A stretch of 64,000 nucleotides of DNA, taken from Pecten maximus (lineage: Eukaryota). The translations under genes and the position numbers were made by a program. Positions 1,014-39,551 of this stretch are shown in pieces. Below the pieces are notes generated by a model. That model was given only the letters and a program-made list of their open reading frames with translations. It was not told the DNA's origin and made no database searches. Location: contig NC_047017.1 in NCBI RefSeq assembly GCF_902652985.1, forward strand, positions 51,770,001 through 51,834,000. Reading direction: 5' to 3'. Positions within the stretch are counted from its first letter, which is position 1; each line of letters begins with the position of its first letter.

Positions 1014-3543
1014 ATGTTCAGGTTGTGGTGTCTGGCCTTACTCGCTTTGGTTTTGTTGGGACATTGTGGTAAGTTTTGTATCATGTTAGCTCTTTTCGTT
1101 AACATCAATCGAAAGCAATATATGTATGTTGTATTAATGAAACTACCACAACATTAGAAGCGTGCTCACCTTGAAATGAGGTAAGACAGGAGACTAAACA
1201 TGGGAGCTGTAAGTCTAATATTTAATACATTTTATATATTTTAAGGAAACATTAGAATGATATCTGAGTAATAGTATGCTAAATTGCATAGAAACAATGA
1301 AAGCAGAACATTTTTAAAAAAAGATATAATATATTTCCTACTATAAAATCTTGACATTTTCGTTTCCACAGCGGCCGAGGGCGATGATGGTGGTGATAGC
1401 GATGATGGCGATAGGAAAAAGAGAAGTATATCTACCCTCCACCTGCTCATTGTTTTGTTTTATAATATATCATATAAATTTAACGTACAGTAGGTAGATT
1501 TTGCACTTGTTTACACTGAAATGAATACATCAGGGTTTTTTTTTAATGAACCCCGAGCTTCTTCTATATTATGGCATTAAATTGGATACATGGTTCTAGC
1601 ATCATTGGCAGGATCCTACGAGAAAAAAACAGCAGTGTAGTGTTTCTAGAATCATTGACGAGACATCGGAGGAAGAAATAGCTGTCTAATGCAATTTCAT
1701 ATTACCATAATTGACGAGATTTAGAAGGAAAAACTAGCTATGTGAAGCAGTTTTATATTACCATCATTGACGAGATTTAGAAGGAAAAACTAGCTATGTG
1801 AAGCAGTTTTATATTACCATTATTGACGAGATTTAGATGGAAAAAAACTAGCTATGTGAAGCAGTTTTATAATACTATCTTTGAGATCTAGAAGGACGAA
1901 CTAACTTGGAATAATCAAAACGCATAGCCAAAAATCTGGCTTCATAAGCCTCATAGCGGACAGTTCCATCTCGTATACCATTCATTGTCTACTTTTTCTC
2001 ATTCATAACAATAGGATTTAAGAATATTTAGTCTCTTGCTATGAACTGCAATTAGACAATGGAATAGAAACAATAATCGTTAACCGTCATCTTAAGTAAA
2101 CCGGTTTAGTACATGTAACAGGAGAGGTGAAAATGTAGCGGCCAGACCGGGGTTCGAACCCGGGAGCTCTGAACACTAGCCGGATGCTCTACCAATTGAG
2201 CTACCTAGTCACCGATGATCGACCCAGTCCAGTCCCGCTACACACCTCCCTCCTTTTTTCCAAGTCTTCGCCCTCGAAGACACACGAGACCATTATACCA
2301 CCACCGTGGGTATTTTAGTTGGGCGCCAATTTTGTAACAGGAGAGGAGAAAATGTAGCGGCCAGAGCGGGGTTCGAACCCGGGACCTCCGAACACTAGCC
2401 GGATGCTCTACCAATTGAGCTACCTGTGATCGACCCAGTCCAGTCCCGCTACAGTACACTTATCAAATCTTTAAAAATGTTCATTTCGTATAGTTATATC
2501 TTAAATCTACTGTTATTTAACACAATGAAAATAAATTATTGATGCATACATTTCCCCTAGTATTGAGATTCTTCAAAATCAAGTTTGATGTCTTAGAAAG
2601 GCTGGCTGCTTCTGATGCCACTTATGTCACACTGTAGAACGGATTCGTAAAATCATAATTCTACAATATCATAGAAAAAAACTATTCACATATTTTTCAA
2701 ATAAGATAAATGATAAAATTTACGTTCCAGGTGGCCACATCTGTGGAATTTTAGCTCACTGGGATCTGCGATACTCGACCTGTATATGTGATACTGGATG
2801 CGGTGGGAACCCGTGGAATGAATGTCGTACGTTGATTGTTTCTTAGCAAAACACATCATACGGGATGTCAGCAATCTCAAAACAGTATCAATATGTCATT
2901 AGTTCAATGACATCACAGTTTACCTTAATGGTCGTACAATCAAGAGGTATTCCGCGTTTACGTCAGTATGGTTTTCTGTTTATTTAAAACTTGCATCATG
3001 AATAGTTTGTTTTGACCTCAAAATCCTTAGTTGACAGATAATGCAACATCTTTCCTATATTTAGGTATTCCGTTAGTACAGTACAAACATTGTTATTCAG
3101 CTGTAAATAACAAATTTCAACTTTAATCAAAGGTATTTAAAGTATATATTGAACTTATCAATCGGGATCTTGTTTTCCCCACAGGTTTACTAATACCACA
3201 ACATCCAGTGTATCACCCATTTCAGCCAGTGTATCACCCATTTCAGCCGGTTTATCATCCAGTTCAGCCGGTTTATCAACATATACAGCCTGTGTTCCAG
3301 CCATTACGCCGAGTGATTCAGCGCTTTGGCGGTGGAGGAGGAAGCAGTAGAGGAGGAGGAAGTAGCAGAGGAGGAGGAGGAAGTAGCAGAGGAGGAGGAA
3401 GTAGCAGAGGAGGAGGAGGAAGTAGCAGAGGAGGAGGAAGTAGCAGTAGAGGAGGAGGAAGTAGCAGTAGAGGAGGATATAGTAAACATGGAGGAGGAAG
3501 AAGTAGCAGAAGTGCAGAAGACAGTTACGACAGAGATGACTAA
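1014..3543 (+). CDS. Paralog A: secreted prepro-protein with mini EGF-like module, PVYHPFQ repeats and cationic GGGSSR tail (~187 aa, 4 coding exons)
   Basis: Hand-spliced exons 1014-1068 (MFRLWCLALLALVLLGHC, signal), 1372-1425 (AAEGDDGGDSDDGDRKKR), 2731-2826 (SGHICGILAHWDLRYSTCICDTGCGGNPWNEC), 3185-3543 (RLLIPQHPVYHPFQPVYHPFQPVYHPVQPVYQHIQPVFQPLRRVIQRFGGGGGSSR...RSSRSAEDSYDRDD*). All introns are GT-AG, phase 1, frame open. TATAAAT at 962; AATAAA at 3770. Confidence 0.85.
1655..1900. repeat. Intronic minisatellite, ~57-bp unit, ~4 copies
   Basis: Repeated ttgacgagatttagaaggaaaaactagctatgtgaagcagttttatattaccat. Confidence 0.85.
2114..2453 (-). mobile_element. Miniature non-autonomous LTR retrotransposon (TRIM) with tRNA-derived LTRs (Ajax/Cassandra-type design)
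   Basis: Direct repeats 2114-2242 and 2333-2453, each TG...CA; 5-bp TSD GTACA (2109-2113, 2454-2458). On the minus strand: PBS TGGCGCCCAAC (tRNA-Lys type, 2328-2318) just inside the 5' LTR, and PPT GGAAAAAAGGAGGGAGG (~2260-2245) before the 3' LTR. Each LTR contains tRNA A-box and B-box sequence (GGTAGCTCAATTGGTAGAGC...GGTTCGAACCC). Confidence 0.9.
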
Positions 3544-3882
3544 ATACAGTATACAACGGTATGGAACACATCATATCACCCAAAGAAATATACACATTAC
3601 ATACACATTGTTACATAGTATATCAAACCTTCAGATCATATCGCACTAACTCATATGATACTTTTATCTTATCGTGGTGAAAAGGACAAAAGACGACAAG
3701 CTCGGTTTATGGCTTTCCAAGTCCTAAAATCATGAATGATACAATACTCCTTATCTAATGCAAACGATAAATAAAAAATAGAACGTTTTTTTCTTTTCAA
3801 ATTGTACAGATTTTCTTTTTGTCTTAATTATACATATATGTCTTTAAACAGGTGCTATGAAGACGAAACCTACATATATATA

Positions 3883-5169: not shown

Positions 5170-5959
5170 TATATTTTTAATATCCTATATAAAATATACA
5201 AATTTCAAATATAGTTTTCTTTTCTTCTGTAGATTAAAGACGTGACACTCAAATGTGTGACGTAAGGTATACTGTTATTCACACATAGGTGTTATATTTA
5301 TAATCTTCTTATTTTCAGATTCACCAATAAAATTGCCAGAGTGGTTGGCCATTTACCGGTCTGATCGCCGAAATCTTGCCTTCAACGTAAAATAAGGCAT
5401 GTTCCATTTTGAGACTGAAATATGAGGAAACTTATTTCAAATAAAACATTAATATATTGTGTTATACCATTGTTTTTTTCTCTATATTATTGTTTAACAC
5501 ATTAATGACTTACCAAAGACAGATTCATCAGTCCGTAAAATGATGGATCTCTAATGACTATATAATGACACCAAGAATACCCAGGAGGTATTTCATATAA
5601 TTCCGGGGTATGTTGGTAATGTCATCTCAAAAGGCACACTTAAAAAGTTTAACTGCTCAGTGATTCCAAATTAGATTAGGAAATGAAATTATCCAAATCC
5701 ACGATGTCTGTTATTTGGCTGTTTATTTGTGACTGCGTCCTCTGATGACTGAACATTTGCCATTTTGAAATGAAAAATATATGAAAATGCTATAACTGGA
5801 GTTAAGATGATTATAAAGTGTTTTCGTTTTTAAATAAAAAATAAAGCTGAACACTCAAAATTGATTAATGTACGAAGACAATTTTGAAGAACGATGCGTT
5901 ATTTGCCGTATTAAGTAAAAATACATGCATACCTTGAATTTCTTGATAATTTACAAAGT

Positions 5960-14932: not shown

Positions 14933-17900
14933 ATGTTTGCTTTTAAAGAACTTGTGTTGTTCACACTGCTAGTCATCGTCGGTAAGTTGCCTACAAACTG
15001 CCAAATTTTATTTTTCCTTTCCAGTAATTAATCCAAGTAGAAATTGTTTTTTCGTTAGTGTATTCATAGCCATGTAGTATACACATCATACACTTAAAAA
15101 TTCAACTCTTTGATTTTTTCTTAATGCAATTTGAATAATTTTACCGATTGTTTGCAACATTTTTGCATAAATATTAATACATTCCTTTTTGTGGTATAAT
15201 GAAAAAAAATTAATTAAGCGGTACTCGCCATTCCTTATGTGTCTATGAATGCTTTGTTTCCTTATCCGTGTAATGTACACGCCATCTTATAATTGTAGCG
15301 TTGGTCTTCATTTAATGACATGTATTAAAACGTTTACACAAAATTAAGATTACCTACAAAGTGATAGCAGTAGATGATGATGTACACGTATGTGTATCCT
15401 ATAGTTGTGGTATTAGAGGTCCAAATTTGAGTTACCTAACATCAACATATATTGAAATATTATAGGTAATTATTTTTTCAATAATGACGCTACATCCTGA
15501 ATCCGTTCGGGTTTTTTTTGATGTTGTGGATATTCTTGTATGCAAAACAGGGAATTAAAAAACATATTGGATATCAATTACGTTTTATAAGCTTGACACA
15601 TATTATGTAGAATGCACACATTTCAATATAGCAAGTAACAATTATTCTAAAGTTAACTATAAAGCTTGGTTTTCCCATGATAAAAATGTATTGTTTGCTT
15701 TACAATTCAAAATTAGATATATATTTTACAGCCGTGGAATGCTCAGAGCGGGAAAAAAGAAGTAAGTATCAAATAATTTTTTGAAAGATTATAAAGAAAT
15801 TAATTTTCATTCACTTCTGTCTGAATATTTTTACACTTTTAATAAATTCGATCTTATACCACATGATAACGTAATCAATGGAGCGGTATTTTTTTATGAT
15901 AGCCACCTGCGGAGCGCATGCGCATTACGATCCTCAAAACAATTGCTGCGTCTGTAATGATGGCTGGGAAGGAGACCCCTTGGTAGCCTGTGAGAGACAA
16001 GGTGAGTCGTTATGTCGTTTGGAATTTTTAAGTGTTTATTTAAATAATTAAATTCGCCAAAACATCTTTCACAAAATAACGCAAAGCACGACACAACGTC
16101 TAGACAGGAAAGTCGAACCTAGGTACCCGATACTTTCAAGGAAAAACTGACGACTTGGAGCCAACGAGACTTGTTCCCGTTAAAGTCTTGGGATTATGGG
16201 GATATCTTATTAACAACAATGGGATCGGAATTGTATTAAGCTGAATCGACCACTAGGGTTGCCATATTGACCACATGAAAATTGAAACACATGTCATTTA
16301 GTGTCCAGGACAGATTAAGTCCTTGGATATACTTCTCGCTCATCTCTAACCGCAGTAAACTCGTTAGTAGTAAATATGAACATGCTAGATTACATACTAT
16401 CTAATCTGAACAAGTTGATAATTATTTTACTACATTACTTCAATACACCTGGCCAGGGAAATAAAAAAAAACACCATAAAACACTGTTCTGATTGGTCCA
16501 TACTATTTTACGATATCATTAAATGATCACAATTGTTATATACGTTTAACAGCGATGATTTATTCTGATATTTCTCTGATAGAAATACAGTAAAATATTT
16601 CTACATAAATGCGACCCGCTGTATATCATCTTAACAGTCCCGATCCAATGATGGTTTTAGGCGTTGGATAAAATGCTTACTTAGATTGTAAATTTATCCG
16701 AATAAACCCTGTTATTGTAACTGTAAACTCTGTCGGTTTCAATCTTTTATATTCTTTAATTGAATTATTCGGAATTCCAATCGACGACCATCTTTGGCGT
16801 TGTAACTATGCATTAATTGTTTTAGTATTTAAATGATCTCGAAAATTTCCCTCAGAACTTTATAACGATAATGTCATCAGTTTTATTAAAACAGATTAAA
16901 TCATAATGGTGTAAAATAATATTATCCAATGATTTAACAGAGGAAGAAGAAAGTAGCAACGATGAGGATGATAATGGGGAAACTGACGAAACTTCCGGTG
17001 AGTATTACTATGCCAACGTAATTGATTCATGTACTGGTCTGATCTAAATTTCAATATGAGAAAGCAAGCTACTGTTGTCTGATGCGTTAAAATAGCCATT
17101 GTTGAAAATGAAAACGAACGATCAAGGTTTCAATTATATATCTATATTCCATCATTAAACGTCATGCATTTTAGTTGCTGAGCACAACAGGATAACGATA
17201 ATTATGTCATGAGAGTAATATTTGTTTGATATTCAATAAGAAAGCAATACCTTTCATTTTAAGGAAGAATATTTAGAATATACCAAAGCGATAAAAAGAC
17301 ACCAGTAACATACTGTCTTATTCAATTGTGGTTACCTTTGACACAAGAGGACAGTGCCATTTTGACTGAACTTAACTTTACCATGTGAGAAATTTCTGTT
17401 GTTATTCGACAAGTTATGCTTCAACTATGAATGAAAAGCAAAGTAGAGATTTGTCAAAAACAACGGTTTTATCAACAATAGTGATTAAAACTTAAATTTC
17501 ACTTGTCAAAATTAAACAAAATGTTTAATGGAGTCGATGTTTATGAATCCTGGTCCCCTTTTGTATTTCGGGTTTATTTTAAAAATTACGTTCGCCTCTC
17601 AAATTCTAAACTTCGGTAAATCACGGATGCCATCTTGAATGACGTCATATGACTACCATTATTGCTCTACCATTTATTATGGTAACATTACCTAAAACAT
17701 GAACTAACATTGATCGGATCGGTTTTCTTTAGCATTTCTATCAATATAATGTAAAATAATAATTTCGATTTTAACAGAGGAAGACGAAAGTAGCAACGAT
17801 AAGGATGATAATGGGGAAAGTGACGAATCTTCTGGTGAGTGTATTTATGTACTGGTCTGATATAAATTGTCAAATTAATTGTTTGTTTTTGACTTTTTTC

Positions 17901-20900
17901 ATATAATCAATCATTATTAGCAATGCATTACATAATCAGGGATTGTAAGGTATTGCTGTGAATGTACGTGCTGAGCTGACTTCTCTAAGCGAAGGTGTTT
18001 AAGTCAACTCGTCCCGAAGTTGATGTTCGGCTGTGCGTTACCACAATCGGCGTAGTCTACACTTGGTCAAGCTCGCATTATGACGTCTTTTACGCACCCA
18101 TACCTGTGTGATCGTAGACTACACTTGCCATTGTCGGCAATATAGATATTGAGTTTATAACATTGTATATTCGGTCATCTTTCCCAATAATATTGTTATT
18201 ACCACAGTGATCATAAAGGCTTAATAAAGATGATAAAATCTTATATTTCACTGGTAAAATTTTTAATAGAGTCGCTGTTTATGAGTTTCAGAGTACTGGT
18301 GCATTTTTTGTATCTAGGGTATATTTTATAAATTTCCTACGCTTCTAAATATCTGAAGTCCGATCGATATCACCTTGGATGACGTCATTTTATATCAAAG
18401 AATTTGGTTCTACGATTTCTAGATTATCACCAATTTGCTCACAGAAAGTATTAACATTGACGGCATCGGTTTTCTTTAACACTTTCTATCAAAATAATGA
18501 AGAATAATAGTTTCTATTAATTTAACAGAAGAAGACGAAAGTAGCAACGATGACGATGCTAATGGGGAAAGTGATGAAGCATCTGGTGAGTATATTTATA
18601 CCAACATAGTTTGCTTATGTACTAGTCTGATATGAACTTTCATATGAAATTTTGGTTACCTTTGACACAAGAGGACAGTGCCATTTTGACTGAACTTAAC
18701 TTTACCATGTGAGAAATTTCTGTTGTTATTCGACAAGTTATGCTTCAAATATTAATGAAAAGCAAAGTAGCGATTTGTCAAAAACAACGGTTTTATCAAC
18801 AATAGTGATTAAAACTTAAATTTCACTTGTCAAATATAAACAAAATGTTTAATGGAGTCGATGTTTATGAATCCTGGTCCCCTTTTGTATTTCGGGTTTA
18901 TTTTAAAAATTACTTTCGCCTCTCAAATTCTAAACTTCGGTAAATCACGGATGCCATCTTGGATGATGACGTCATATGACTACCATTATTGCTCTACCAT
19001 TTATTATGGTAACATTACCTAAAAAATGAACTAACATTGATCGGATCGGTTTTCTTTAGCATTTCCATCAATATAATGTAAAATAATAATTTCGATTTTA
19101 ACAGAGGAAGACGAAAGTAGCAATGATGAGGATGATAATGGGGAAAGTGACGAATCTTCTGGTGAGTGTATTTATGTACTGGTCTGATATAAATTGTCAA
19201 ATTAATTGTTTGTTTTTGCCTTTTTTCATATAATCAATCATTATTAGCAATGCATTACATAATCAGGGATTGTAAGGTATTGCTGTGAATGTACGTGCTG
19301 AGCTGACTTCTCTAAGCGAAGGTGTTTATGTCAACTCGTCCCGAAGTTGATGTTCGGCTGTGCGTTACCACAATCGGCGTAGTCTACACTTGGTCAAGCT
19401 CGCATTATGACGTCTTTTACGCACCCATACCTGTGTGATCGTAGACTACACTTTCTATTGTCGACAATATAGATATTGAGTTTATAACATTGTATATTCG
19501 GTCATCTTTCCCAATAATATTGTTATTACCACAGTGATCATAAAGGCTTAATAAAGATGATAAAATCTTATATTTCACTGGTAAAATTTTTAATAGAGTC
19601 GCTGTTTATGAGTTTCAGAGTCCTGGTGCATTTTTGTATCTAGGGTATATTTTATAAATTTCCTACGCTTCTAAATATCTGAAGTCCGATCGATATCACC
19701 TTGGATGACGTCATTTTATATCAAAGAATTTAGTTCTACGATTTCTAGATCATCACCAATTTGCTCACAGAAAGCATTAACATTGACGGCATCGGTTTTC
19801 TTTAACACTTTCTATCAAAACAATGAAGAATAATAGTTTCTATTAATTTAACAGAAGAAGACGAAAGTAGCAACGATGACGATGATAATGGGGAAAGTGA
19901 TGAAGCATCTGGTGAGTATATTTATACCAACATAGTTTGCTTATGTACTAGTCTGATATGAACTTTCATATGAAGTATATATTTATTTTTTTCAGATTAT
20001 AAATCGTTATGATCAATATATTATATAATGAATGTTTTCCATGAGCATGCTGAAGATATTCTAGTATCATCTGGTAGCACAGTAGCTTGACAAAGCTCTG
20101 AAAATTAAGTGATATATCTAACAGATGATTACCAAATTAACAAAATTCTACTGTTACCCTGACATTGACTCTCAGATGAAGATGTTTTCTCCAAAAACCT
20201 TCCTTAAATTAAACATCACTTACATGCTAATTGGAAAACTCCAATTTCAATTTTAACATTAAGTTATTTCACAGATTTCCCGTATTTTGAAAGTATGGAT
20301 TTTCTTTCTGAAAACCTAGCATTTCTACTATGGAGTAGGTTTGAGACTGGCCAAATTGAATTCTCGAACCAAATACAAATTTTGCATTCTAAGATCCCTC
20401 CAGTTCAACATATGTTTACCAATTTTACGGTATATTTCATTTTTAGATCTTTAAACACCAATTTATATTCACTGTGTGAAATATAATACGTGAGATACCA
20501 AGTTTCTGTGGTTTGGAATTTTGTAATAGCCACAGTTGAAAATTGTAACGATCAAGGTTTCGTCATTTAAATAATTAAGTGTTATACATTTCAGTTGCTG
20601 TGCATGACAGGGTAACGATACATTATGTCATAAGAGTACAATGTGTTTAATGATAAAGAGAAAATCATTCGTATTGTTCTATACATTTTATTTCAAGGAA
20701 GAACATTTAGAATTTTTTTTAAATACCAAAACGATAAAAATGTAAAGACATCAGTAACAAAATGTTTCTTGTCTTATTCCGTTGTCGTTACCCTTGACAC
20801 AAGAAGACAGCACCATTTCCACTTCACAATGTCAGATATTTCTGTTATTATCCAGCAGGTAATGCTTCAATTATGAATAAATAGCAAAGACGTAATTGGT

Positions 20901-23900
20901 CAAAACCCAAAGTCTTATCAACCATAGCGATCGTTCAATATTCGTATATTACCACAAGGATGATAGAGGCTTAATAAGGATGATAAAATTAGTATATTTC
21001 ACTAATACAATGTAAAAACATAGTAAAATGATCAATGGAGTCGCTGTTTATGATCTTAAGAGTGCTTCTGCAACCATTTTGTATATAGGGTTTATTTTAC
21101 AATTTACTTTCAAATTCTGAAGTTCGATCAATCACGGATGCCATCTAAGATGACTTCATATAATATTACTTTGATCATTGCTCAAACATCTATTATCACA
21201 ACATTGCCTAAAAAGGTATTAACATTGATCGGATCGGTTTTCTTTAGCAGTTTCTATTGAAATAATTTAAATAATATTATCGATTTATTTAACAGAGGAA
21301 GACGAAAGTAGCAATGGTGAGGATGGTAATGGGGAAAGTGACGAAACTTCTGGTGAGTGTATTTTAGTCAACAAAGTCATCTTATGTACCGTTCTGGTAT
21401 GAACTTTAATGAAAAAATGTTGGGGTTTTTTTCAGATAATAAATCATTATAATAAATGTGCTATATAATCAGGGATTGTAAGATACTCTTATTCCACCAT
21501 AGTGATGATATAGGCTTAATAAACGTAATAAATTCATTTATTGCATTTTGTCAGTGAAATATAGAAATTTATCAAACTAATACAATTTTCACTGCAGCGA
21601 TGAGCAGTGAAAATATAAGATTTTGCTGTGAAAATATAACTTTTTCGTTTTTGACCAATCAGAGCGAACCTTTGTGTTCACCACATTGTAACTTCCCGAT
21701 TTTTCCAATCGAAGTGAAGATAGATACATTGGTTATTTTGCTGTATTTCTGAAATATTCATACTAGCTTTTGACAAAATACTAACTTACGATAGCTATTC
21801 ATGCATAGATTCTCCGACAACAGTAGAAAACGCTTTAATTGCCATGATCAGTCCTTTCAAAATGGCGCCATCAAGTTGACGTGGAGTAACGCCACAAAGA
21901 GATGACGTCATGAATTCCCGCTCTTTTTGATACTATTAAATTCGTGAAAATATAGATGTTCTGTCATACTCGTGAAATATATGTTATATTAAACGGGAAA
22001 ACATTCAATATCCTTATATCCTATATATTTTTTAATTGAGTCACTGTTTACGACTTTTAGAATCCTGTTGTCATTTTTGTATCTAGAGTTTATTTTATAA
22101 TATTTTCCCGCTTCTCAAAGTATGAAGTTCGATTAATCGCGGGTGCCATCCTGGATGACGTCATATTTTATTTAAGATCATTGCTCTACGATTTCTATAT
22201 TATCATCACTTTGCCTTCAGAACGTATTATCATTGACGGCGTCAATATTCTTTTGCATTTTCTATCAAAATAATGTTAAATAATATTATCCAATGATTTA
22301 ACAGAGGAAGATGATAGTAGTAACGCTGGTAATGATAACGGAGAAAGAGACGAATCTTCTTTTTACCAACATAGTTTACTTATGTACTGGTCTGATATGA
22401 ATTTTCATGTGAAAAATATTCTTGTTTTCAGATTATCAATCATTATTTTCAAAGTACTATCTAATCAGGGTTTTCTATTAGCATACTGAAGACATTACAG
22501 TGACGTTATGCAGCACTGTAGCTTGACCAGATTTTGAAAATTTAATGATGTAAAAGGTTACCACATAAACAAATGCCTTAAAAACATACAATTTTATTGT
22601 TACCCTGACATTGACTCCCAAATGAAGATGTTTTCTCCAAAAACCTTTGACATTAAACATTACATACATGCTGATAGGGAAACTCATATTTCAGTTAAAA
22701 CTTTAAGTTATTTCACAAATTTCCCGTGTTTTGGCAGTATCGATTTTATTCTTTCTGCAAACCTAGCTTTTCTACTTTTGGTAAGTTTGAGACTGGCCAA
22801 ATTGAAATATCGAAGCAAATAAAACTTTTGCATTCTAAACTTATGTATCCCCACTCTCTTCACTTCATCATCTATACCAATTTTGGTGTATAATTTATTT
22901 TTAGATCGTTATACACCAATTGAAAAAATGTTATATTCATTGTATGAAAATATAACACGTGAGAGACCACGCTTCTGTGGTCTGATACTTTATAACAGAC
23001 ATGGTTATCGATCGATCGAGGTTTCCAACATTTAAATATATAGTTGATATTCAATGATGAATCATTAAATGTTATACATTTAAGTTGATGAGTATGACAG
23101 GATAATGATACATTCCGTCATGCGAGTAAAACCTTTTTAATGTTCAACAGGAAACCATTCGTAATATTCTATACATATCATTTACGGAAAGAACATTTAG
23201 AAAATACCAAAGCGATAAAAAGAAATGAAGACATCAGTAACATTATGTTGTCATATTCCATTGTCTTGACACAAGAATACATTACCATTTTGACCGAACT
23301 GAACTTTACAATTTCAAACAATTCCGTTAGTTATTTTTCAAATATGAATGTGATTGGTGAAAAAAATATTGTATCAACCATAGTGATTGTGCGATATTCG
23401 TTTGAAGATTTTAAGAGTTTTGAAACCTTTTTATCAAAGGTTTATCTTTACCACGCTTCTCAAATTCTGAAGTTCGATCAAAAAATGATGCCATCTTAGA
23501 TGACGTCATATGATACTAAGGGCTATTGCTCTACAAGTTTCTTTCGTCACTTTGCCCATAGAATGTTTAGCAATTTCTATGAAACGAAATGCAAAATGAC
23601 AGTATATATATTACTTTAACAGAGGAAGATGAAAATAGCAACGATGAGAATGATAATGGGGAAAGTGACGAATCATCTGGTCAGTATATTTAGGCCAACA
23701 TAATTTTTCTGATGAACTGGTCTTATATAAATTTTATATTACACTTGTAAAAGTAGAGTCTCTGTTTATGAGTTTAAGAGTTCTTATCCCATTTTGTATC
23801 TACGGTTTATTTTATAAAGTTCTTACGCTTCGCAAATTTTTTGCTCGATCAATTTCGGATACCATATTAGATGACGTAATATTATATTGAATATATCATT

Positions 23901-26650
23901 GCTCTACGAAATAGAAATCACTTTGCCTGCAGAAAGTATTAACACTGATTGGAATGGTATTTTTTAACATTCTCTATCAATGTAAATTAATAGTATCCAT
24001 TGCTTTAACAGAGGAAGACGAAAGTAGCAATGATGAGGATGGTAATGGGGAAAGTGACGAATCTTCTGGTGAGTATGTTTATGCCATCTTAATTTAGATT
24101 AACTGGTCTGAAATAAATTTGCATATGAAACATGTTTTTTGGTGGGGTTTTTTCAGATTATAAATCATTATTATCAATACATGTATATTATATAAACAAG
24201 GTTTTCAATTAGCATACTAAGTATAAAAAAAACCATAAAATTTCATTGTTACCCTGACGTTGACTCACGTATGAAAATGTTTTCTCCAAAAACCTTTCAA
24301 ACTTTACAACATCAATTACATGCTAATGTGGAAACCTAAATTTTAGATTCAACTTCAAGTTATTTCACAAATATCCCCGTTATGACGGTATGGATTTTTT
24401 TCTGGAAACCTAAATTTTCTACTATGGGGTAGGTTTGAGACTGGCCAAATTGAAATCTCGAACCAAATGCAAACTTTGCATTCTAAAATTATGTAAACCC
24501 ACTCTCTTTATTTCATCATTCATACCAATTTTGGTGTAGATTTTATTTTTAAATCTTTATACATCAATTTATAAAGAGGCTATGTATTATATAAAACTAT
24601 AACATGACCCGGCCAGGCTTCTGTGGTCTTATACTTCATTGTTACCACGGTTGAAAATGAAAACGAACATCATCTAAATATGTATAGTCAATGATAATTT
24701 TCTTGAATATTATACATTTAATTAAATGAGTATTTAACAATAGTGATATACTCTGTCATTAGTAATACACTATTTATTCTTATGTATATAGATGTATAAT
24801 GTAATTTTTAGAAGCATAATGTTTCCTATCGTATGCTTATGTGGTAACACTTGACAGCGGGATATTTCACCTGTAAAAGCGTAATAAAATATACACCCGT
24901 TGATCAACAAAGTTATAAAAAATCTTCGTATCAATGATGTCACTCTATATAAATAGAAACTAATCAACAGTAGGCAATAATTCCTGCATGTCTGTAGTGT
25001 TTACAACCTTTAGGGCAATGTTTTGGGATGGTGTTGGGGACAGCCCTGGTGTACGCATCATGTAATTTGTGCGTCAGTGATATAAACAATAGTATCAAAT
25101 TACAAAACAACTTGCAGACTTTCATATAGGCTCCTGATAACCGACTATTCCATCACTTGCCTGTTTTAATTGATAAAAAGACATCTCTGTCAGACAAAAG
25201 GGTATCAATTATATTCTGCTGAAATAGTTTAAACCCGTAAATATTAAATATATATATGTGGGATATTCACTTGAAATAGGTGGTTAATAGTTTTTACTGT
25301 CACTACAGTGGCAGAAGGAGGAGATAGCGTGGGTAACCAAAATGGCAATGCTAATCAAGGAGAGAGCGATCCTCATCGTAAGTATACTTCTTAGGAAATT
25401 TTTGACGATATACTGGTCAGATATGATACATTTATACATAGATCTGAAAGGATAAAATGACTAGTATGAAATATGCATCAACATTTAAAGATGGTGTTAC
25501 TGAGTACGTCATCATGGTTTGAAATTAAGGTCTGACTCATATCAATGTTTAGTAAAGTCTTCGTGAATATCCTTATTTTGCATTAAGGTATTGTACGCAT
25601 ATCTGTTATAGCTTAATAATGATTGGCATGACGATTCCTACTTGTGTTACTACGTGGTACTCTCTTTACATTAGAAATAGAGAAAACCCATATTCAAACG
25701 AAACCCTCATATCGCCCGTAGGTGTTTCTTGTTTATTCAACGACACATGCCGTGAACGTTTTGGTCAAATTCTGCTGATGTCAAATGAAAGTTTAGGTCA
25801 AATCCTGGTGACGTCACCTTTTTGGATGAACACTACTGTAAATCAACAGACAACCTGCAGACGTTTTCCCACGAAAGGCTATGATGTAATGATATTGAAT
25901 ACGTTCAATTATTTGCAGCACATTTTTAAAATGCCGTTACATTTTTTCTATGATAGGCAGCTGTGGAAGTCATGCCCATTACGATGTTCAAAACGAATGC
26001 TGCGTCTGTAATGAAGGCTGGGAAGGCGACCCATCTACCGACTGTGATAAAAAAGGTCAGCTGCCTATCTATTTGTTCATTTGTATTATCATTATTTTCT
26101 ATCATTTATTTATTTCCTGTAAACGTTTAATTGGTGTATTACCGTTATTTTCTCTACATTATTCATTAACAACATCAATTCAGAACTTTGCTTGTTCTTT
26201 CAGTGACAGGAGTTGACGGGAATCAAAATGTTGGTGATAGTGAAGAAGATAGCTTTTCTCGCTGTAAGTGTTTTGATAAAACGTAATACTCAACTCATCT
26301 ATTGGGATCTGATGCGTAATACATTGTTAAGGCGCTGAATTTATATTTAAATTAATCTACATAGAAAGTAAATCCTAAGTGTAATATATAACAGATCAGG
26401 CAACTTTCTTGCTATTTCAGCATTCTTTTTAAGTGATGTTTTCATTTACATGCCATGCCCTTCATATAATCTTCTAGAGCGAAACATACGTGCACGTTTT
26501 TTCATGATTTTATGAAAATTCGTTCTTAAACATTATTAATGTCATGTTTGGATATACATTTGTACATGTAGATTTTCTGCTTATTATTGAGTTGGGATTG
26601 TACAAAAGATACACAAGATATTAATAAAACATTTTTTTTCAGATCGTTGA
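14933..26650 (+). CDS. Paralog B: secreted highly acidic (Asp/Glu/Ser) protein with two mini EGF-like modules (~289 aa, ~15 coding exons)
   Basis: Exons 14933-14981 (MFAFKELVLFTLLVIV), 15732-15761 (AVECSEREKR), 15903-16001 (TTCGAHAHYDPQNNCCVCNDGWEGDPLVACERQ). Then 57-bp acidic exons (consensus EEDESSNDEDDNGESDESS) at 16941-16997, 17778-17834, 18529-18585, 19105-19161, 19855-19911, 21296-21352, 23623-23679, 24012-24068. Then 25309-25377 (VAEGGDSVGNQNGNANQGESDPH), 25957-26055 (RSCGSHAHYDVQNECCVCNEGWEGDPSTDCDKK), 26204-26263 (VTGVDGNQNVGDSEEDSFSR), and probable last exon 26643-26650 (YR*). All GT-AG, phase 1; AATAAA at 26747. The last exon is the least certain. Confidence 0.82.
17326..19975 (+). 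repeat. Recent intragenic tandem duplication, ~1.33-kb unit x2, each carrying two acidic microexons
   Basis: ~17326-18652 is nearly identical to ~18653-19975; homologous exons are offset by 1327 and 1326 bp. Confidence 0.9.
21535..22025 (-). mobile_element. Inverted copy of the 8430-9027 repeat inside a paralog B intron
   Basis: Reverse-complement similarity (tttttgaccaatcagagcgaacc; aaacgggaaaacattcaatatcct). Confidence 0.7.
22305..22360 (+). other. Ninth acidic microexon copy that has lost its original splice donor
   Basis: tttaacag acceptor intact, reads EEDDSSNAGNDNGERDESS, but the G|GTGAGT donor is deleted; an internal in-frame G|GTAATG exists after 22328. Confidence 0.6.
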
Positions 26651-33805: not shown

Positions 33806-35558
33806 TTAATCCCCGCTGCTATTACTTCCGTTTTTGCTACTTTTACTTCCGCTGTTGCTACTGTTACTTCCGATCTCGCTACTTTCACTTCCGATCTCGC
33901 TACTTTCACTTTCGCTCTCGCTACTTTCACTTTCGCTACTACTGCTACTGCTGCTACTGCTACTGCTACTGCTACTGCTGCTGCTGCTGCTGCTACTACT
34001 ACTACTGCTTTCGCTGTCTTGTATCACGTCTGGCTCTGGCTGAAGGACTGGTAGTGGTTGAGCTACGGTGATTAAATCTAATGGGAAAGAATATGTAATC
34101 GATAATGAAATTAAGTACAAATTGAATTGATAATAATTGTATTTGGTTTATGATTGCAGAACAAATGTACCCATTCTTATTTGTGAAGAGTGCTCCACGA
34201 GAAATTGATATTTTCATACATTCGGATTTTACCGAAACACAACACAGAATATTATCATAGTATCCGTCAAATGGAATATGATATGAATGCACATTGTACC
34301 ATCTTGTTAAATGAGCGTTCGACTAATATTTGACATAATTAAAATGATCCACATTATCCTATTAACTCCTGGTTTTCCAAGAAAACTGCGCACTAACTTT
34401 CTCAATTGGCACCTGACATATTTGATTAATGATTCATAAACCGGTGTTCAGGAATCAAAAATGACCTTTCTGTCAAAAATGACAATAGCTATTATTAATA
34501 TAGTGAGTGATATAGCATTATCAATCCGTTTATAGACTTAAAGGGCAGCCATGAGACCTGTATATGGCATATACTGAATGGAAACTTACGACATCCAGTA
34601 TCTGGAGTTCCACTGCATCCATGGTCACATACACATGCTCCAGCATTCCAGTCATAATGAGCCAAGAATCCACATTCCACAGGAGCCCCAAAAAGGTAGC
34701 CTAAATAAACAGCAAGCTGAACATACACACGAAAATACAGTGTTTCCTTGATATGATATACTGACTGAATTAATTTTGATTTTAATGCAGATTGCTATAT
34801 CTAAAATATATAATATAACGTAGGACAAACAAAAACAAACTTGTTTCTGTTGTTAGAAACAAAATATGATTTTTTTTTTTTTATAATAAAGGAGAGGAGA
34901 CAGATTACCGCATGTAAATTAAAGCCAGCCAAATGTTGTAGTAACGAATGTAGTATACAACACGATCCGGCTGACTCCTATTTCAAATATATACTTCCAA
35001 AAATTACAAGATCTCCATAAATACCTCTCTTTTCTCTCCTCAGGTCAGCTCCATCCGCCACTGTTAAACCAATAGTTACTTTTGTAATTTGTTTTATTTC
35101 TCATTCAAAACATTATAATTTTATTAAATACTAAATGTCAATATCCATCTTTGTTCTAAAGTTCATTTACCTATTTATGGAGTTGATTTTTTCAATGTCA
35201 GCCCGTAAATTAAGCAATGGCGTCGCTGTTTGTTACATCGCTTTTCACTGGCTGTGCATCATTAAAAGTGGCATTGCCGTTTGTGTTAGCAACGAAATTA
35301 TTATGAGCTGCGCATATGTCAATAGTGTACATCATTTTATTGTATTTTTTTATATCACAAAATATTCACTGCCTATCTTATTAAGCATTATTTGATATAT
35401 AAGATCATGGTATTGTATTTAGGTGAGTCTTTATACCACTAGTTATTCATTCCTTACCTAATCAAGCTGTATTTGATATTTAAGTCAACAAATACATACT
35501 CACCCCAACATCCGACCACGACCAACGTTAGCAACGTAAGATCTCTGATCCCAAACAT
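33806..35558 (-). CDS. Paralog C: secreted prepro-protein with mini EGF-like module and poly-Ser / Ser-Glu tail (~157 aa, 4 coding exons)
   Basis: Exons 35558-35504 (MFGIRDLTLLTLVVVGCW), 35060-35025 (VADGADLRREKR), 34700-34590 (GYLFGAPVECGFLAHYDWNAGACVCDHGCSGTPDTGC), 34077-33806 (HLITVAQPLPVLQPEPDVIQDSE-S25-ESESSESESESSEIGSESSEIGSNSSNSGSKSSKNGSNSSGD*). All GT-AG, phase 1; TATA-like at ~35602-35608; AATAAA (minus strand) at 33727-33722. Confidence 0.85.
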
Positions 35559-37648
35559 CCTGTACAAATGCTATGGCTGGTCAACGGATGAGTGTACAGT
35601 ACTTATATGGTGTGACACACCTGTCTTAACGCCATAACCACACGCTACATTGCCTTTATAAAGAATGGAAAGCCGATCTTTCCGGCTATTTAGGTTTTCG
35701 TCCAGTTACATATATAAAAGTCAAATAAAGACTAATCATACATACGACTTCGTCACTAATCTTTTCCGTTTTGACGTCAAAATAAGGGACAGGTGTTACA
35801 AGTGTTAATTTCACAATGCCTTGACACGATACAGATTTACAGTGTGTTCAGTACACTACATATCTTTTGATAGTTTGATGTGTTTGAAGTTTTAAAAGTT
35901 CCCTGAGTAAGGTATTATTAAACCGAATGATTAGATTTCTAGATTTGTATTTCCTAAGTTAAAAACGTCTTGGTATAGCTAGTGATATCCCAACCATTCT
36001 TATGTGTATTACACTTGACAGACAGCTGGCTTTTACCAATTAATGATGTCATTCATTTCATTTCTAGTTATTCTTTTATTTTATGATCTATACGTTTATT
36101 AGCATGACGAAAGCCAAATTCTGCGTCAGGACTGCCACATTATCATAAGATGAAATGGCAATTAAGGGGTTCATAATCTGTGGACAACTTCATTACATGC
36201 CATCATCTGTTGCCGGAATGTAAGTAGATATACATCATCTGTTGCCGGGATGTAAGTAGATTATGCATTATATTGTTATTACGGGATGTTAGTATATACA
36301 CATTATTTGGTGATTGTGAGAGATTGGGTGAAGGAAAATTATATTGAAATGAATTACGTAATTTGGGAAACATATACATCATTATTGATAAATATCGAAT
36401 CTGGTATTAGGTTCCCTTGGGAACGGGGACCGCTATATTTAGATACCATCATCGAATTGAGGTAAAAGTATATCTTTTATATTAAATCAAAATACATGTA
36501 GATAATATAAGTACTTTTAAAGCAAGATATCACATCCATGTTATTATTGCAAGCATTCCAATGGCGAAAAAAACCCGATAAATGTTAAGTTCGTAACTTT
36601 GCTGCCGAATCCATATCACGTAAAATGGAGATACCTAAGACCTGATGAATGCCTTCCGTAGTGCCATACCACATGTGTTTTCATTGTATTCTGCACTAGA
36701 TTTTTATGCGGATTACATTGATTTGTTTTTGTTTTTGGACCCTAGTGGGTTTTTTTTCTGATGTTTACTATCTGTTCGTATCGTTTGTTTCAATACTTAT
36801 TTCCTTTATTTGTTTATTTGATTATCTATTTATTTATCTATTCTTTTTTATTTATCATTTACTTATTAATGGGAGCTATGTACAAAAAGAAATATGTTGA
36901 TGAAATCTGAATATAGTACTTATACAATACTCAGCCTGTGGACTATTTGTCTCTTCAGTTTAGCGGTCTCTCCCTTGCATATGAAACTTAGAGGTTTAAT
37001 GAGAGCTACGACGTGAAAGTCAGATTAGAATGATTCGTTGTCATACGGTGATGGAACAGACCGACATTAGAATATTGCCATTAAGAATACGGTATGATGT
37101 AATATATTCATTAATCCCCATTGTAATGTATCTCGGCGCTAGAGATCAATCCATTGGAGTATATGTACTCGGCTGCCCTGCTTTAACTGGCCTATTTTTT
37201 CTTTGTGTAACCGTTTCCTGTCTGTAGGATTGGAGTAATTTGGACAGTCCATATATAATGGTGTATTAGTACATTACTATAGTATGATAAATCTAATAAA
37301 CATTACTTTATATGTAAATACCAGAGGTCATAGGTCAAAAACAAAAACCAATATTTCGAGATATTTTTTAAGATAAACCTATTTCATGGTAGTCTGCTTC
37401 GTTCAGTCATCTGTTTTTAAATATGTTGATAACTAGGGATTATACATCATGTGTGTGTATGGTTCCACTCTTACCTCAGCATATGAATAGGAATTAAGTT
37501 GTAAATAATGGCTTTGCACTTTGATCTGAAGCATATGACAACCATTACGAAGCAATAAGGGGCGGTACGATATGCTATATACAGTAACTAAATTAGGTCT
37601 TACCTTTTACAGGATTAAGATCCACTCTGATACAAGACGTTCGCCGAC

Positions 37649-39551
37649 ATGACGCCACTTCGAAATATATTGTTTTCTTTGATCATTGCTTTTGGTAAGT
37701 TATTGTTTATTGTAATCGACCGTTACTTAACTACATTTAACCGGTATCATTTCTGTTAAAACGTTAATTGTATCAATGTTTATGAGTTTGAATACACTAA
37801 CTGAATATTTCGCATGTTTAAATTTTTATTTAAAACACGTTGACGACATGAACTTGGCCGGTTATATAGCTGGATTCTAAAAGTGTGTATTAAATAGTTT
37901 TCCTAAAGAAATAGCATACATTTTAACAATTAAATCGGTTTGATGACAATCATTTAATTCGTGAATTCAATAAATATAGATTAAATACAGCTTTCGCTGA
38001 ATGGCAACATTAGGTATTCATCTAAAGTATGTCAACACAATTTCTTATTTCAGCAGTGGAATGTGCTCTTCTAGGAAAACGAGGTTTGTGCTACCGTGTT
38101 CTGATTTATCTAAGATTAAGATACATTTGTACTTTGTCAGTAAGAACGATGTCACTTGAGTTCTAGCTTGAAATGTACATTTCATCGTTAAATAACGATA
38201 AGCTTTTATTAGTGCAGTCGTAACTAGGCGGAACTTTTCCACCAATAAAGGCGCTGAAATGATAACAATGTTAAAATATGTACGCTTTATTACATGAAAT
38301 CCAAAGTAATGAACATTTATTTTAGTTCTAGTTTGATGTTTTGAGAGCACGCTGCCTCAATGGTGGATGCATACCTCTTCATATCGAAACAGATACTTTT
38401 TGTCAAATTTCCCCATCACTATTTTCAAATCTACGCCACCGATTCTAAAAAAGCAAATAAGAATAAAGGTACCAGAGAGATATAAAAATTATTGAGATGA
38501 ATTAAATCATTAATACATTATGAATCTTTCTCACAAAAGAGACTTTTTTCGAAAATATCAAATTGGCTTTCTCATTTCATTTTTAACATATTTGCTGATG
38601 ATTATAAACAGTTTTCTTGACTACTTATTACAGACCAATGTTTTAATAAAAGTTTGACTCATTTTATTACTGAAGAATCACGATCTGTAGGAAGTAGTAG
38701 TGGAGGATACAACATTGACAGCGTTATCAGTGACAGCAGCAGTGGAGAACACGGCTGTATTCACGGTAATATAACAGTACAGTAGCGACGAGGTGCCAAC
38801 CTATCATTTCGTTATGAAATAACAAAATTTACGTCACATTTTGATAACTTTTTATACAAAAACAAATGCCTTATTCTCAACCAATAGGCCAATAATACAA
38901 TAATTATATTGTCCTTACACGTCCTAGAAGGACGAACCATCAAAACCTCAGCGTGTTGTTAATCGTTATCGCCATCAAATGAAGTGATAGTTAAAATTAG
39001 ACTTAAAATGTATTTACAGTTATCAAGTGAGGCGTTCAATACCGAGATTACAAAATGATTGTCTTAAACTAATCCGAAATTCGTTTACAGCAATCAAGTG
39101 TGGAGTTCGAGCTTATCCTCTAGGACGAATGTGTGTATGTTACCCGGAATACAAAGGCAATCCTTATACAAACTGCTATGGTAAGTAGTTAATAAACGAA
39201 AAAAACACGGACGAACGGCCATGCTTAAACAAAGATAGTGCATACACATTGCTTTCCAGAATATCATCTTTACAGCACATGTCTGTATCTAGAATGTTTC
39301 TTTTTTTCAAAATCATTCAGACAAATGTTAAACACCACTCAGTCGTATGAAAACAATAGTTCATATATCATTTGGAAACAATACTTTAAACAATACTTTA
39401 TATTTCCTGTGAAAACAATAGTTCATATATCATTTGGAAACAATTGTGTAGGTTTATGCAATAATTCTGTGCCGAAGATAACCTGTATTAAATGTAGGAA
39501 TTTTAACAAATAGTCTTACTTTCTTTTTCAGACAAGGAGAATCATGAGTAA
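37649..39551 (+). CDS. Paralog D: small secreted prepro-peptide with Ser/Gly segment and mini EGF-like module (~91 aa, 5 coding exons)
   Basis: Exons 37649-37694 (MTPLRNILFSLIIAF), 38054-38083 (AVECALLGKR, homologous to B exon 2), 38676-38765 (ESRSVGSSSGGYNIDSVISDSSSGEHGCIH; alternative in-frame acceptor at 38690), 39091-39180 (AIKCGVRAYPLGRMCVCYPEYKGNPYTNCY), 39532-39551 (DKENHE*). Phase-1 introns; AATAAA at 39605. Confidence 0.78.

What the first reader, a model, noticed from the sequence alone, without database searches (positions are those of the whole stretch)
2731..39180. Every Cys module carries exactly five cysteines, with the odd Cys in three different positions
Seen: A CGILAHWDLRYSTCICDTGCGGNPWNEC and C CGFLAHYDWNAGACVCDHGCSGTPDTGC put the extra Cys at the EGF G-[YFW] aromatic position. 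Both B modules (CGAHAHYDPQNNCCVCNDGWEGDPLVAC, CGSHAHYDVQNECCVCNEGWEGDPSTDC) have a CC doublet. D has four Cys in the module exon plus one five residues upstream (GCIHAIKC). Known: EGF domains have 6 Cys paired 1-3, 2-4, 5-6; these modules look like the C2/C4/C5/C6 core (CG..A...CxC..G..GdP...C) without the 1-3 bridge. Inference: repeated retention of one unpaired thiol suggests selection for intermolecular disulfides. B, with two modules at opposite ends of an acidic spacer, could act as a bifunctional cross-linker, while A, C and D would be monovalent caps.
Basis: partly seen in the sequence, partly recalled or inferred. Interest (0 to 1): 0.8.

Follow-up and report, generated by a model that had tools for sequence, protein, structure and literature searches.

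The report
Scallop mini-EGF proteins with odd cysteine
Four neighbouring, unannotated king-scallop genes encode small secreted proteins built around a cut-down EGF-like module that keeps one extra cysteine with no partner inside the module. This is probably a handle for covalent linking, as in teneurins, but that is untested and the tidy "five everywhere" picture holds only in part.

Summary
All five peptide strings are present where stated. A, B1, B2 and C each have five Cys in a 28-residue module, and each module lies in a symmetric phase 1-1 exon. The modules come from the 6-Cys CGxNAxC...CxCxxG[FY]xGxP...C type that is common in this genome (Pecten maximus). An extra Cys is rare in other modules of this type (1 of 40).

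- Every gene has a small propeptide exon ending in a furin-like site (RKKR, REKR, REKR; D has only GKR).
- A conserved Cys sits at the signal-peptide/propeptide boundary in all seven family proteins.
- D's upstream exon carries a second Cys, so mature D probably has six.

RNA contigs confirm the splicing of gene C. D showed only unspliced, low-depth cover.

Mature A and C, and A's Argopecten orthologue, have exactly five Cys in the whole chain, so one cannot pair within the chain. Mizuhopecten relatives have 5+5 and 6+5.

An intermolecular disulfide is the best reading. Precedents are teneurin EGF2/5 and scallop Sbp8-1. Pairing with the boundary Cys is a live rival. The cross-linker/cap scheme remains speculation.

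The parts
1014..1068 (+). Gene A exon 1: signal peptide MFRLWCLALLALVLLGHC, ending G|gtaagt (phase 1)
   Evidence: tblastn of the Argopecten orthologue P0020 matches 1035-1067.
1372..1425 (+). Gene A propeptide exon: (A)AEGDDGGDSDDGDRKKR(S), with furin-like RKKR
   Evidence: It matches P0020 DDGDDSDDGRKKRS.
2731..2826 (+). Gene A module exon (phase 1-1): GHICGILAHWDLRYSTCICDTGCGGNPWNEC, 5 Cys, with the extra Cys at the aromatic position
3185..3543 (+). Gene A last exon: Pro/His-rich stretch followed by basic GGGSSR repeats, then the stop codon; no Cys
14933..14981 (+). Gene B exon 1: signal peptide MFAFKELVLFTLLVIV
   Evidence: It is 75% identical to the signal peptide of Mizuhopecten P0010.
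15732..15761 (+). Gene B propeptide exon: (A)VECSEREKR(T)
   Evidence: It matches P0010 AVECSDRRERRS.
15903..16001 (+). Gene B module exon B1: TCGAHAHYDPQNNCCVCNDGWEGDPLVACERQ, 5 Cys, with a CC doublet
16941..24068 (+). Gene B acidic spacer. Eight intact 57-nt phase 1-1 microexons at 16941-16997, 17778-17834, 18529-18585, 19105-19161, 19855-19911, 21296-21352, 23623-23679 and 24012-24068, each encoding about EDESSNDEDDNGESDESS. A decayed copy at 22305-22361 has no GT donor.
25957..26055 (+). Gene B module exon B2: SCGSHAHYDVQNECCVCNEGWEGDPSTDCDKK, 5 Cys, with a CC doublet
   Evidence: No signal-peptide exon lies upstream of it.
26204..26263 (+). Gene B further acidic exon: (V)TGVDGNQNVGDSEEDSFSR. 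It ends at a perfect T|gtaagt donor. If it is not spliced, it reads on as CKCFDKT* to 26285. The 3' end of B is unresolved.
35504..35638 (-). Gene C exon 1: 5'UTR plus signal peptide MFGIRDLTLLTLVVVGCW (coding part 35558-35504)
   Evidence: RNA contigs and the joint 35060/35504.
35025..35060 (-). Gene C propeptide exon: (V)ADGADLRREKR(G)
   Evidence: Both of its joints are seen in RNA contigs from 4 runs.
34590..34700 (-). Gene C module exon: YLFGAPVECGFLAHYDWNAGACVCDHGCSGTPDTGC, 5 Cys, with the extra Cys at the aromatic position
   Evidence: Both joints are seen in RNA contigs.
33806..34077 (-). Gene C last exon, coding part: Pro-rich linker followed by a poly-Ser and Ser/Glu acidic tail, then the stop codon; no Cys. 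The 3'UTR continues below 33806.
37649..37694 (+). Gene D candidate exon 1: signal peptide MTPLRNILFSLIIAF
   Evidence: Splice signals only; there is no RNA cover.
38054..38083 (+). Gene D candidate propeptide exon: (A)VECALLGKR(D)
   Evidence: There is no RNA cover.
38634..38765 (+). Gene D candidate spacer exon: QCFNKSLTHFITEESRSVGSSSGGYNIDSVISDSSSGEHGCIH, 2 Cys
   Evidence: RNA contigs run unspliced across its donor.
39091..39180 (+). Gene D module exon: IKCGVRAYPLGRMCVCYPEYKGNPYTNCY, 4 Cys. If the donor is not used, it reads on as GK* (stop at 39186-39188).
   Evidence: Unspliced low-depth contigs cover 38708-39600.

Best explanation
This is a scallop-restricted tandem cluster of four genes (A, B and D on the + strand, C on the - strand) that encode small secreted pre-pro-proteins.

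Shown from sequence, RNA or orthologues:
- Each gene has a signal-peptide exon, then a short propeptide exon ending in R-x-K/R-R (D has only KR).
- One (A, C, D) or two (B) exon-sized truncated EGF-like modules follow.
- The rest is low-complexity tail or spacer: basic Gly/Ser/Arg in A, acidic poly-Ser/Glu in C, and an acidic Asp/Glu/Ser/Asn microexon array in B.
- The module derives from the local 6-Cys CGxNAxC type. It has lost C1 and has Tyr or Trp in place of C3.
- It carries one supernumerary Cys.

Inferred:
- The core is held by the C2-C4 and C5-C6 disulfides.
- After convertase cleavage, mature A and C have five Cys in all, so one thiol cannot pair within the chain. It most likely forms an intermolecular disulfide, either a covalent homo- or heterodimer or a link to another matrix protein, before or on secretion. 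This is how teneurin EGF2/EGF5 work, where C3 is also replaced by Tyr or Phe.
- The two thiols of B could polymerise it or close it into a loop.
- The tails suggest an extracellular matrix role in shell, periostracum or byssus. The tissue was not established.
For: - The strings and phase 1-1 exons are.
- In a six-frame search of the 918-Mb genome, only these five modules score above 50 bits; the next best scores 28.
- Canonical neighbours fix the mapping of C1 to C6.
- The background rate of an extra Cys is 1 in 40 modules.
- RNA contigs from 4 runs of one study give exactly the predicted joints of gene C.
- The tails of A and C hold no Cys.
- A's orthologue in Argopecten irradians (XP_069119227) keeps the same five Cys, the RKKR site and the exon order.
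- Mizuhopecten relatives XP_021377970 and XP_021377979 have modules with 5, 5, 5 and 6 Cys.
- The B1 and B2 exons are 77% identical while their flanks are about 50% identical.
- Four-Cys versions with an aromatic residue at C3 exist elsewhere (a Solobacterium MAG), so the 4-Cys core can stand alone.
- Pfam's best hit is EGF_Teneurin.
- The AF2 model of the module has pLDDT 76 and a beta-hairpin, and its only two VIA hits are NELL1/NELL2 EGF domains.
- Precedents: teneurin EGF2/5 have an odd Cys count and form disulfide dimers (PMC2185078). Extra free Cys polymerise scallop Sbp8-1 (PMC5975577).
Against: - No protein-level evidence of any kind exists for these genes.
- A conserved Cys at the signal-peptide/propeptide boundary (GHC, GCW, VEC) could pair with the odd Cys in the pro-form.
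- D probably has six Cys and is not seen spliced.
- P0010 module 1 has six Cys.
- Two-module proteins have even totals and could pair internally.
- B's 3' end is unknown.
- The EGF assignment is below every statistical threshold: Pfam 16.9 bits against a cut-off of 24.3, PDB sequence E>0.2, and structural Z 2.9.
- The tissue of the RNA runs is not known.
Confidence: 0.5

Rival explanations
1. The odd Cys is masked within the chain by the propeptide. Signal peptidase cuts before the conserved boundary Cys (for example IVA|VEC or VVG|CW). The pro-forms of the single-module proteins then have six Cys, and the odd Cys is disulfide-bonded to the propeptide Cys. After furin-type cleavage the short propeptide either stays tethered or leaves by exchange. 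The fifth Cys is therefore not free in the cell.
For: - A Cys lies within three residues of the exon 1/exon 2 junction in all seven family proteins, although their signal peptides are otherwise diverged.
- An Ala precedes VEC in B, D, P0010 and P0014, which gives canonical small residues at -3 and -1 for cleavage before VEC.
- The pro-forms of A, C and P0020 would have an even count of six.
- The dibasic site is conserved in 7 of 7 proteins, and 6 of 7 have the full R-x-K/R-R.
Against: - Cleavage directly after the Cys (Cys at -1, Gly or Val at -3) fits the same rule in all seven proteins and would remove the Cys.
- The pro-forms of the two-module proteins would then be odd (11).
- D would have 7.
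- No cleavage-site predictor or protein data were available.
Confidence: 0.2
2. The fifth Cys is kept as a free thiol for chemistry other than protein-protein disulfides. Possible uses are addition to DOPA-quinone in a tanned matrix (periostracum or byssus), metal binding, or redox buffering as in mussel mfp-6.
For: Free thiols and Cys-DOPA chemistry are discussed for scallop and mussel adhesives (PMC5975577). The low-complexity tails suit a matrix protein. A's tail contains Tyr- and His-rich PVYHPFQ repeats.
Against: The tissue is unknown. No tyrosinase or similar enzyme gene was seen in the window, although only ORFs of 90 aa or more in 42500-64000 were listed. Secreted proteins with an exposed lone thiol are usually retained or dimerised in the ER (general knowledge).
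Confidence: 0.12
3. The extra Cys has no special role. These are fast-evolving, lineage-specific genes with relaxed constraint, and the count of five is an accident of shared ancestry. At least D may be a decaying copy.
For: - The sample is small and consists of paralogues.
- The tree of 28-column modules is poorly resolved.
- D is not seen spliced.
- One module has six Cys and one has four.
- One microexon copy has already decayed.
Against: - The extra Cys is kept between Pecten and Argopecten at the same site.
- It is kept in both old B duplicates.
- The same aromatic-position Cys recurs in five other modules (C and four Mizuhopecten modules), although shared ancestry cannot be excluded.
- The background rate is only 1 in 40.
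Confidence: 0.1
4. These are precursors of small bioactive peptides, of the antimicrobial or signalling type. The disulfide-rich module is the released product and the charged tails are pro-regions.
For: The order signal peptide, propeptide, dibasic site and Cys-rich peptide is typical of such precursors (general knowledge).
Against: There is no dibasic site after the module. The tails are long repeats typical of matrix proteins. B carries a spacer of about 150 residues between two modules.
Confidence: 0.08

Closest known systems
Teneurin (Ten-m/Odz) EGF-like repeats 2 and 5
   Same: These are tenascin-type EGF modules in which the third Cys is replaced by Tyr or Phe. That leaves an odd Cys count, and the odd Cys makes intermolecular disulfide dimers (PMC2185078). 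Here C3 is also replaced by Tyr or Trp, and the best Pfam hit is EGF_Teneurin.
   Different: In teneurin the orphaned C1 is the free Cys. The modules sit in an 8-EGF rod of a very large type II membrane protein. Here C1 is also gone, except perhaps in D, and a new Cys appears at the aromatic position or beside C4. The proteins are small and secreted, with low-complexity tails. The Pfam score is below the cut-off.
Invertebrate CGxNAxC...CxCxxG[FY]xG[DN]P...C EGF-like arrays (Dumpy-like; oyster K1R013, labelled 'Tenascin-R'/'MEGF10')
   Same: This is the parent module type, with one module per phase 1-1 exon. Dozens of copies lie on C6 and C15 of this genome. In the oyster proteins the last module also has a Cys at the aromatic position.
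   Different: Those modules keep all six Cys and occur as long tandem arrays. The scallop family has one or two modules, each lacking C1 and C3.
Mollusc shell-matrix EGFL/EGFZP proteins (gigasin-2, EGFL1/2, LUSP-17)
   Same: These are small secreted proteins with EGF-like domains from pteriomorph bivalves. Their genes are tandemly arranged, and furin sites are noted in EGFZP (PMC9290575).
   Different: They have two adjacent canonical EGF-like domains followed by a ZP or ZP-like domain, and their scallop locus is flanked by ATE1. The proteins here have no ZP part, and their modules have 4+1 Cys.
Scallop byssal protein Sbp8-1 (atypical TIMP)
   Same: This scallop matrix protein has supernumerary free Cys that cause disulfide polymerisation. 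It has been proposed as a cross-linker (PMC5975577).
   Different: It has a different fold (TIMP). The extra Cys lie in its C-terminal part, and there are two per chain.

Membership tests
EGF-like domain (Pfam EGF clan, e.g. PF23106 EGF_Teneurin, PF07974 EGF_2) | Six conserved Cys paired 1-3, 2-4 and 5-6 | tested here: not met
   C1 is absent and C3 is replaced by Tyr or Trp, as shown by alignment with canonical modules of the same genome. The pairing itself cannot be tested.
EGF-like domain (Pfam EGF clan, e.g. PF23106 EGF_Teneurin, PF07974 EGF_2) | C4-x-C5-x2-G-aromatic-x-G ... C6 signature | tested here: met
   CVCNDGWEGDP...C in B and CVCYPEYKGNP...C in D. A and C have Cys in place of the aromatic residue.
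EGF-like domain (Pfam EGF clan, e.g. PF23106 EGF_Teneurin, PF07974 EGF_2) | Score above the curated Pfam cut-off | tested here: not met
   The best hit is 16.9 bits against a cut-off of 24.3 (B2 against PF23106). Three of the five modules have no hit at all. The PDB sequence search gave E>0.2.
EGF-like domain (Pfam EGF clan, e.g. PF23106 EGF_Teneurin, PF07974 EGF_2) | EGF fold (two-stranded major hairpin plus C-terminal loop) | tested here: inconclusive
   The AF2 model of the C module has pLDDT 76 and a hairpin at residues 14-17/22-25. Foldseek found nothing significant; its top hit was a T. gondii EGF domain at E 3.5. VIA-align wide gave only two hits with Z>=2, both EGF domains of NELL1/NELL2 (Z 2.9 and 2.1).
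EGF-like domain (Pfam EGF clan, e.g. PF23106 EGF_Teneurin, PF07974 EGF_2) | Module encoded by a symmetric phase 1-1 exon | tested here: met
   All five module exons are phase 1-1 with AG/GT boundaries. The C exon is confirmed by RNA joints.
Teneurin-type dimerising odd-Cys EGF | Third Cys replaced by an aromatic residue | tested here: met
   Trp (A) or Tyr (B1, B2, C) at C2+6, which is the C3 column of canonical modules.
Teneurin-type dimerising odd-Cys EGF | The orphaned C1 is the unpaired Cys | tested here: not met
   A, B1, B2 and C have no C1, and their extra Cys lies elsewhere. Only D may have a C1-like Cys, through an unconfirmed splice.
Teneurin-type dimerising odd-Cys EGF | Disulfide-linked dimer on non-reducing gels | not testable with these tools
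   This needs protein biochemistry.
Teneurin-type dimerising odd-Cys EGF | Teneurin architecture (type II membrane protein, 8 EGF, YD repeats) | tested here: not met
   The gene models give proteins of about 150-350 residues with an N-terminal signal peptide and low-complexity tails.
Mollusc EGFL/EGFZP shell-matrix proteins | Two adjacent canonical EGF-like domains followed by a ZP or ZP-like domain | tested here: not met
   A, C and D have single modules. B's two modules are separated by an acidic spacer of about 150 residues. The tails are repeats and no ZP part is present (definition from PMC9290575).
Proprotein-convertase-processed secretory precursor | N-terminal signal peptide followed by R-x-K/R-R before the mature part | tested here: met
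   RKKR (A), REKR (B) and REKR (C); D has only GKR. The relatives have RERR, REKR and RKKR. The signal peptides were judged by eye only.
Proprotein-convertase-processed secretory precursor | Cleavage actually occurs | not testable with these tools
   This needs N-terminal sequencing or MS.

The most novel reading that the evidence does not exclude
The cluster encodes a covalent assembly kit. A thiol is kept caged by the conserved boundary Cys of a short propeptide until convertase cleavage. It then drives disulfide exchange outside the cell. Bivalent B chains with acidic spacers polymerise and are capped or decorated by monovalent A (basic tail) and C (phospho-Ser-like acidic tail). This would set the length and charge of a matrix copolymer in the scallop shell or byssus.
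Probability: 0.1. Interest if true: 0.75.

Novelty: new variant of a known kind. Interest (0 to 1): 0.45.

Why it matters
If the odd Cys is a cross-linking handle, this is a compact natural example of an EGF-derived 4-Cys scaffold carrying one reactive thiol joined to interchangeable charged tails. That would interest people working on biomineral and bioadhesive matrix assembly and on protein-material design. It would also be a second, independent case after teneurins of losing the C1-C3 bridge to make a covalent oligomerisation module. No protein matching these P. maximus genes was found in the protein collection, and their relatives in other scallops are named only 'uncharacterized protein'. 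The gene models given here, especially the RNA-confirmed gene C, are therefore directly usable.

Tried and rejected
- Three word-index protein searches, with P0020, P0014 and P0055, returned only the queries or their own cluster. No protein matching the window's genes was found in that collection.
I could not inspect the Mizuhopecten or Argopecten loci or their neighbouring paralogues.
- A paper search for the relatives' accession numbers found nothing. The P. maximus shell-proteome paper has no supplements held as text, and its main text says nothing specific.
- The AF2 model of the two-module Mizuhopecten protein had pLDDT 56, and its structure search was dominated by the signal-peptide helix, so it was uninformative.
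- Model coordinates are not exposed, so Cys-Cys distances could not be measured.
- The PDB sequence search gave nothing significant.
- I considered and rejected the idea that B1 and B2 are two genes. No signal-peptide exon lies before B2, and the phase 1-1 microexon chain between them is uninterrupted.
- I considered and rejected membership in the EGFL/EGFZP shell-protein family.
Single exons and database orthologues were used instead.
- The window has no N runs.

Full report
**Source.** The window is G000:C3:51770001-51834000 of an assembly with 918,306,378 bases in 3,983 contigs. These figures equal the published Pecten maximus assembly, 918.3 Mb in 3,983 scaffolds (PMC7191990). Notes by other agents on this genome also name the king scallop. 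The window is 35% G+C and has no N runs.

**Observation.** The four full strings are at A 2742-2825 (+), B1 15908-15991 (+), B2 25962-26045 (+) and C 34591-34674 (-). The D module is at 39099-39176 (+). A, B1, B2 and C each hold five Cys in 28 residues, and D holds four.

Each module lies in an exon with AG/GT boundaries and phase 1 at both ends: A 2731-2826, B1 15903-16001, B2 25957-26055, C 34700-34590 and D 39091-39180.

A six-frame profile search of the whole genome gives 52-66 bits for these five modules. The next best hit scores 28 bits. The family is therefore confined to this locus.

**What the module is.** The weaker genomic hits are ordinary one-exon modules of the form C1-x3/4-C2-G-x-x-A-x-C3-...-C4-x-C5-x-x-G-[FY]-x-G-[DN]-P-x3-C6. 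Aligned with them, the family keeps C2, C4, C5 and C6. It has Trp or Tyr exactly at C3 and lacks C1.

Statistical support for "EGF" is weak:
- Pfam gives only sub-threshold EGF_Teneurin hits, 16.9 bits against a cut-off of 24.3.
- The PDB sequence search is not significant.
- An AF2 model of the C module exon has pLDDT 76 and one beta-hairpin. Foldseek finds nothing significant.
- An exhaustive VIA-align search returns only two chains with Z>=2. Both are EGF domains, from NELL1 and NELL2, at Z 2.9 and 2.1.

Four-Cys versions with an aromatic residue at C3 (CG..AHWD....CVCDEG.EGDP...C) occur in a Solobacterium MAG protein. The 4-Cys core can evidently stand alone.

**Is the fifth Cys more than chance?** Among 40 other modules of this type taken from fetched loci of the same genome, 39 have no supernumerary Cys and one has CCC. 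In the family the extra Cys sits at the aromatic position (A, C), beside C4 (B1, B2), or upstream (D). The B1 and B2 exons are 77% identical, whereas their flanks are about 50% identical. That is an old duplication kept under constraint.

| Gene | Propeptide exon | Peptide |
|---|---|---|
| A | 1372-1425 | AEGDDGGDSDDGDRKKR |
| B | 15732-15761 | VECSEREKR |
| C | 35060-35025 | ADGADLRREKR |
| D | 38054-38083 | VECALLGKR |

All introns are GT-AG and phase 1.

- **Gene C.** It is confirmed by RNA contigs from four runs of one 2015 study. The joints are 35504/35060, 35025/34700 and 34590/34077.
- **Gene A.** It is supported by its Argopecten irradians orthologue XP_069119227 (P0020). That protein has the same order of parts, the same RKKR site and the same five Cys.
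- **Gene B.** It has eight intact 57-nt acidic microexons between B1 and B2, and no signal-peptide exon lies before B2. Two-module relatives exist in Mizuhopecten yessoensis: XP_021377979 (P0010) and XP_021377970 (P0014). B's 3' end is open. Exon 26204-26263 either ends at a perfect GTAAGT donor or reads on through two more Cys to a stop.
- **Gene D.** This is the weakest model. Its first two exons have no RNA cover. The stretch 38708-39600 is covered only by low-depth contigs that are colinear with the genome across both predicted splice sites. Its spacer exon 38634-38765 begins QCFNK and ends GCIH, so it holds two Cys.

**Cys accounting.**
- The tails of A and C have no Cys. After the dibasic site, A and C have exactly five Cys in the whole chain, and so does P0020.
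- D would have six.
- B would have ten, or twelve if the last exon reads through.
- P0014 has 5+5.
- P0010 has 6+5. Its first module carries both the CC doublet and the aromatic-position Cys.
- All seven family proteins also have a Cys within three residues of the exon 1/exon 2 junction: GHC, GYC, GCW or VEC.

By the -3/-1 rule, signal peptidase could cut just after this boundary Cys, which removes it. It could equally cut just before it, which leaves it at the start of the propeptide. I could not decide between the two.

**Mechanism.** A chain with five Cys must leave one thiol unpaired or bonded to another molecule. The closest precedent is teneurin. In its EGF repeats 2 and 5 the third Cys is Tyr or Phe, the count is odd, and the repeats make disulfide-linked dimers (PMC2185078). 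Within scallops, two extra free Cys polymerise the byssal protein Sbp8-1 (PMC5975577).

I therefore rate an intermolecular disulfide as the most likely role, at 0.5. The main rival, at 0.2, is pairing with the boundary Cys in the pro-form. That would make the single-module precursors even (six Cys). It would also explain why the boundary Cys is conserved across otherwise diverged signal peptides. The remaining rivals are thiol chemistry other than disulfides, no function, and a bioactive-peptide precursor.

Both Mizuhopecten members have two modules, so the mix of one- and two-module proteins is not conserved.

**Relation to known families.** The proteins differ from the known mollusc EGFL/EGFZP shell proteins. 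Those have two adjacent canonical EGF-like domains plus a ZP or ZP-like part and lie at another locus (PMC9290575). They are not teneurins. They are best described as a new, scallop-restricted variant of odd-Cys EGF-like modules. A small tree of the modules pairs A with P0020, C with P0014 module 1, and D with P0014 module 2. It is poorly resolved.

**Limits.**
- All three word-index protein searches found only the queries or their own cluster.
- Joined spliced models were neither searched nor folded.
- The tissue of the RNA runs is coded and unknown.

Noticed in passing
P0005 and P0013 (Solobacterium sp. MAG proteins MBR2829499, MBQ6532997): These bacterial MAG proteins carry 4-Cys modules, such as CGIGAHWDFDQENCVCDEGLEGDPWKGC, that are strikingly like the scallop modules. 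In a poorly resolved tree one of them falls among the scallop modules. This could be convergence, gene transfer or contamination; I did not resolve which.
   Followed up: partly
P0011, P0019, P0056 (Crassostrea virginica XP_078330874; Magallana gigas K1R013; C. virginica XP_022312004): These basic oyster proteins have five to six canonical 6-Cys modules. The last module also has a Cys at the aromatic position (KPSCHGNP, TTGCAGDP, STGCAGDP), giving 6+1. The same odd-Cys device may be used more widely in bivalves.
   Followed up: partly
window 38708-39600: Low-depth RNA contigs from four runs tile this stretch without any splice. They run across D's predicted intron and on towards the satellite at 39702. 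Nothing covers 35870-38700. This could be D pre-mRNA, a different transcript or an antisense transcript.
   Followed up: no
window 39702-42459: A satellite with a 32-bp unit and about 86 copies at 89% identity, with strong negative GC skew. It lies directly after gene D.
   Followed up: no
window 49067-50404; 62597-63476; 63759-64000: Further tandem arrays with units of 39/154 bp, 155 bp and 30 bp.
   Followed up: no
window 56412-59818: Two long ORFs of 708 and 436 aa resemble a non-LTR retrotransposon (an inference from the sequence; they were not scanned against a family library). They are flanked by near-identical segments at 54639-54965 and 60897-61238.
   Followed up: no
window 22305-22361: A ninth copy of B's 57-nt acidic microexon (EDDSSNAGNDNGERDESS) has lost its GT donor. 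It is a decayed exon inside the array.
   Followed up: partly
window 2241-2459 (- strand): A tRNA-like repeat lies inside the intron of gene A between the propeptide exon and the module exon.
   Followed up: no
L027 (G000:C15, about 8.65 Mb): One canonical module in the large C15 array reads CGADDRCCCNKGYYGDPYVGC. It was the only one of the 40 background modules with an extra Cys, and the extra Cys is beside C4, as in gene B.
   Followed up: no
window 34326-34343 and 35707-35727: Long, deep RNA contigs (1.4-2.4 kb, depth 34-39) touch the window only by pieces of 18-21 nt at these two places in the runs where they appear (X2-X4). They may be chance repeats or tiny exons of another transcript.
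   Followed up: no
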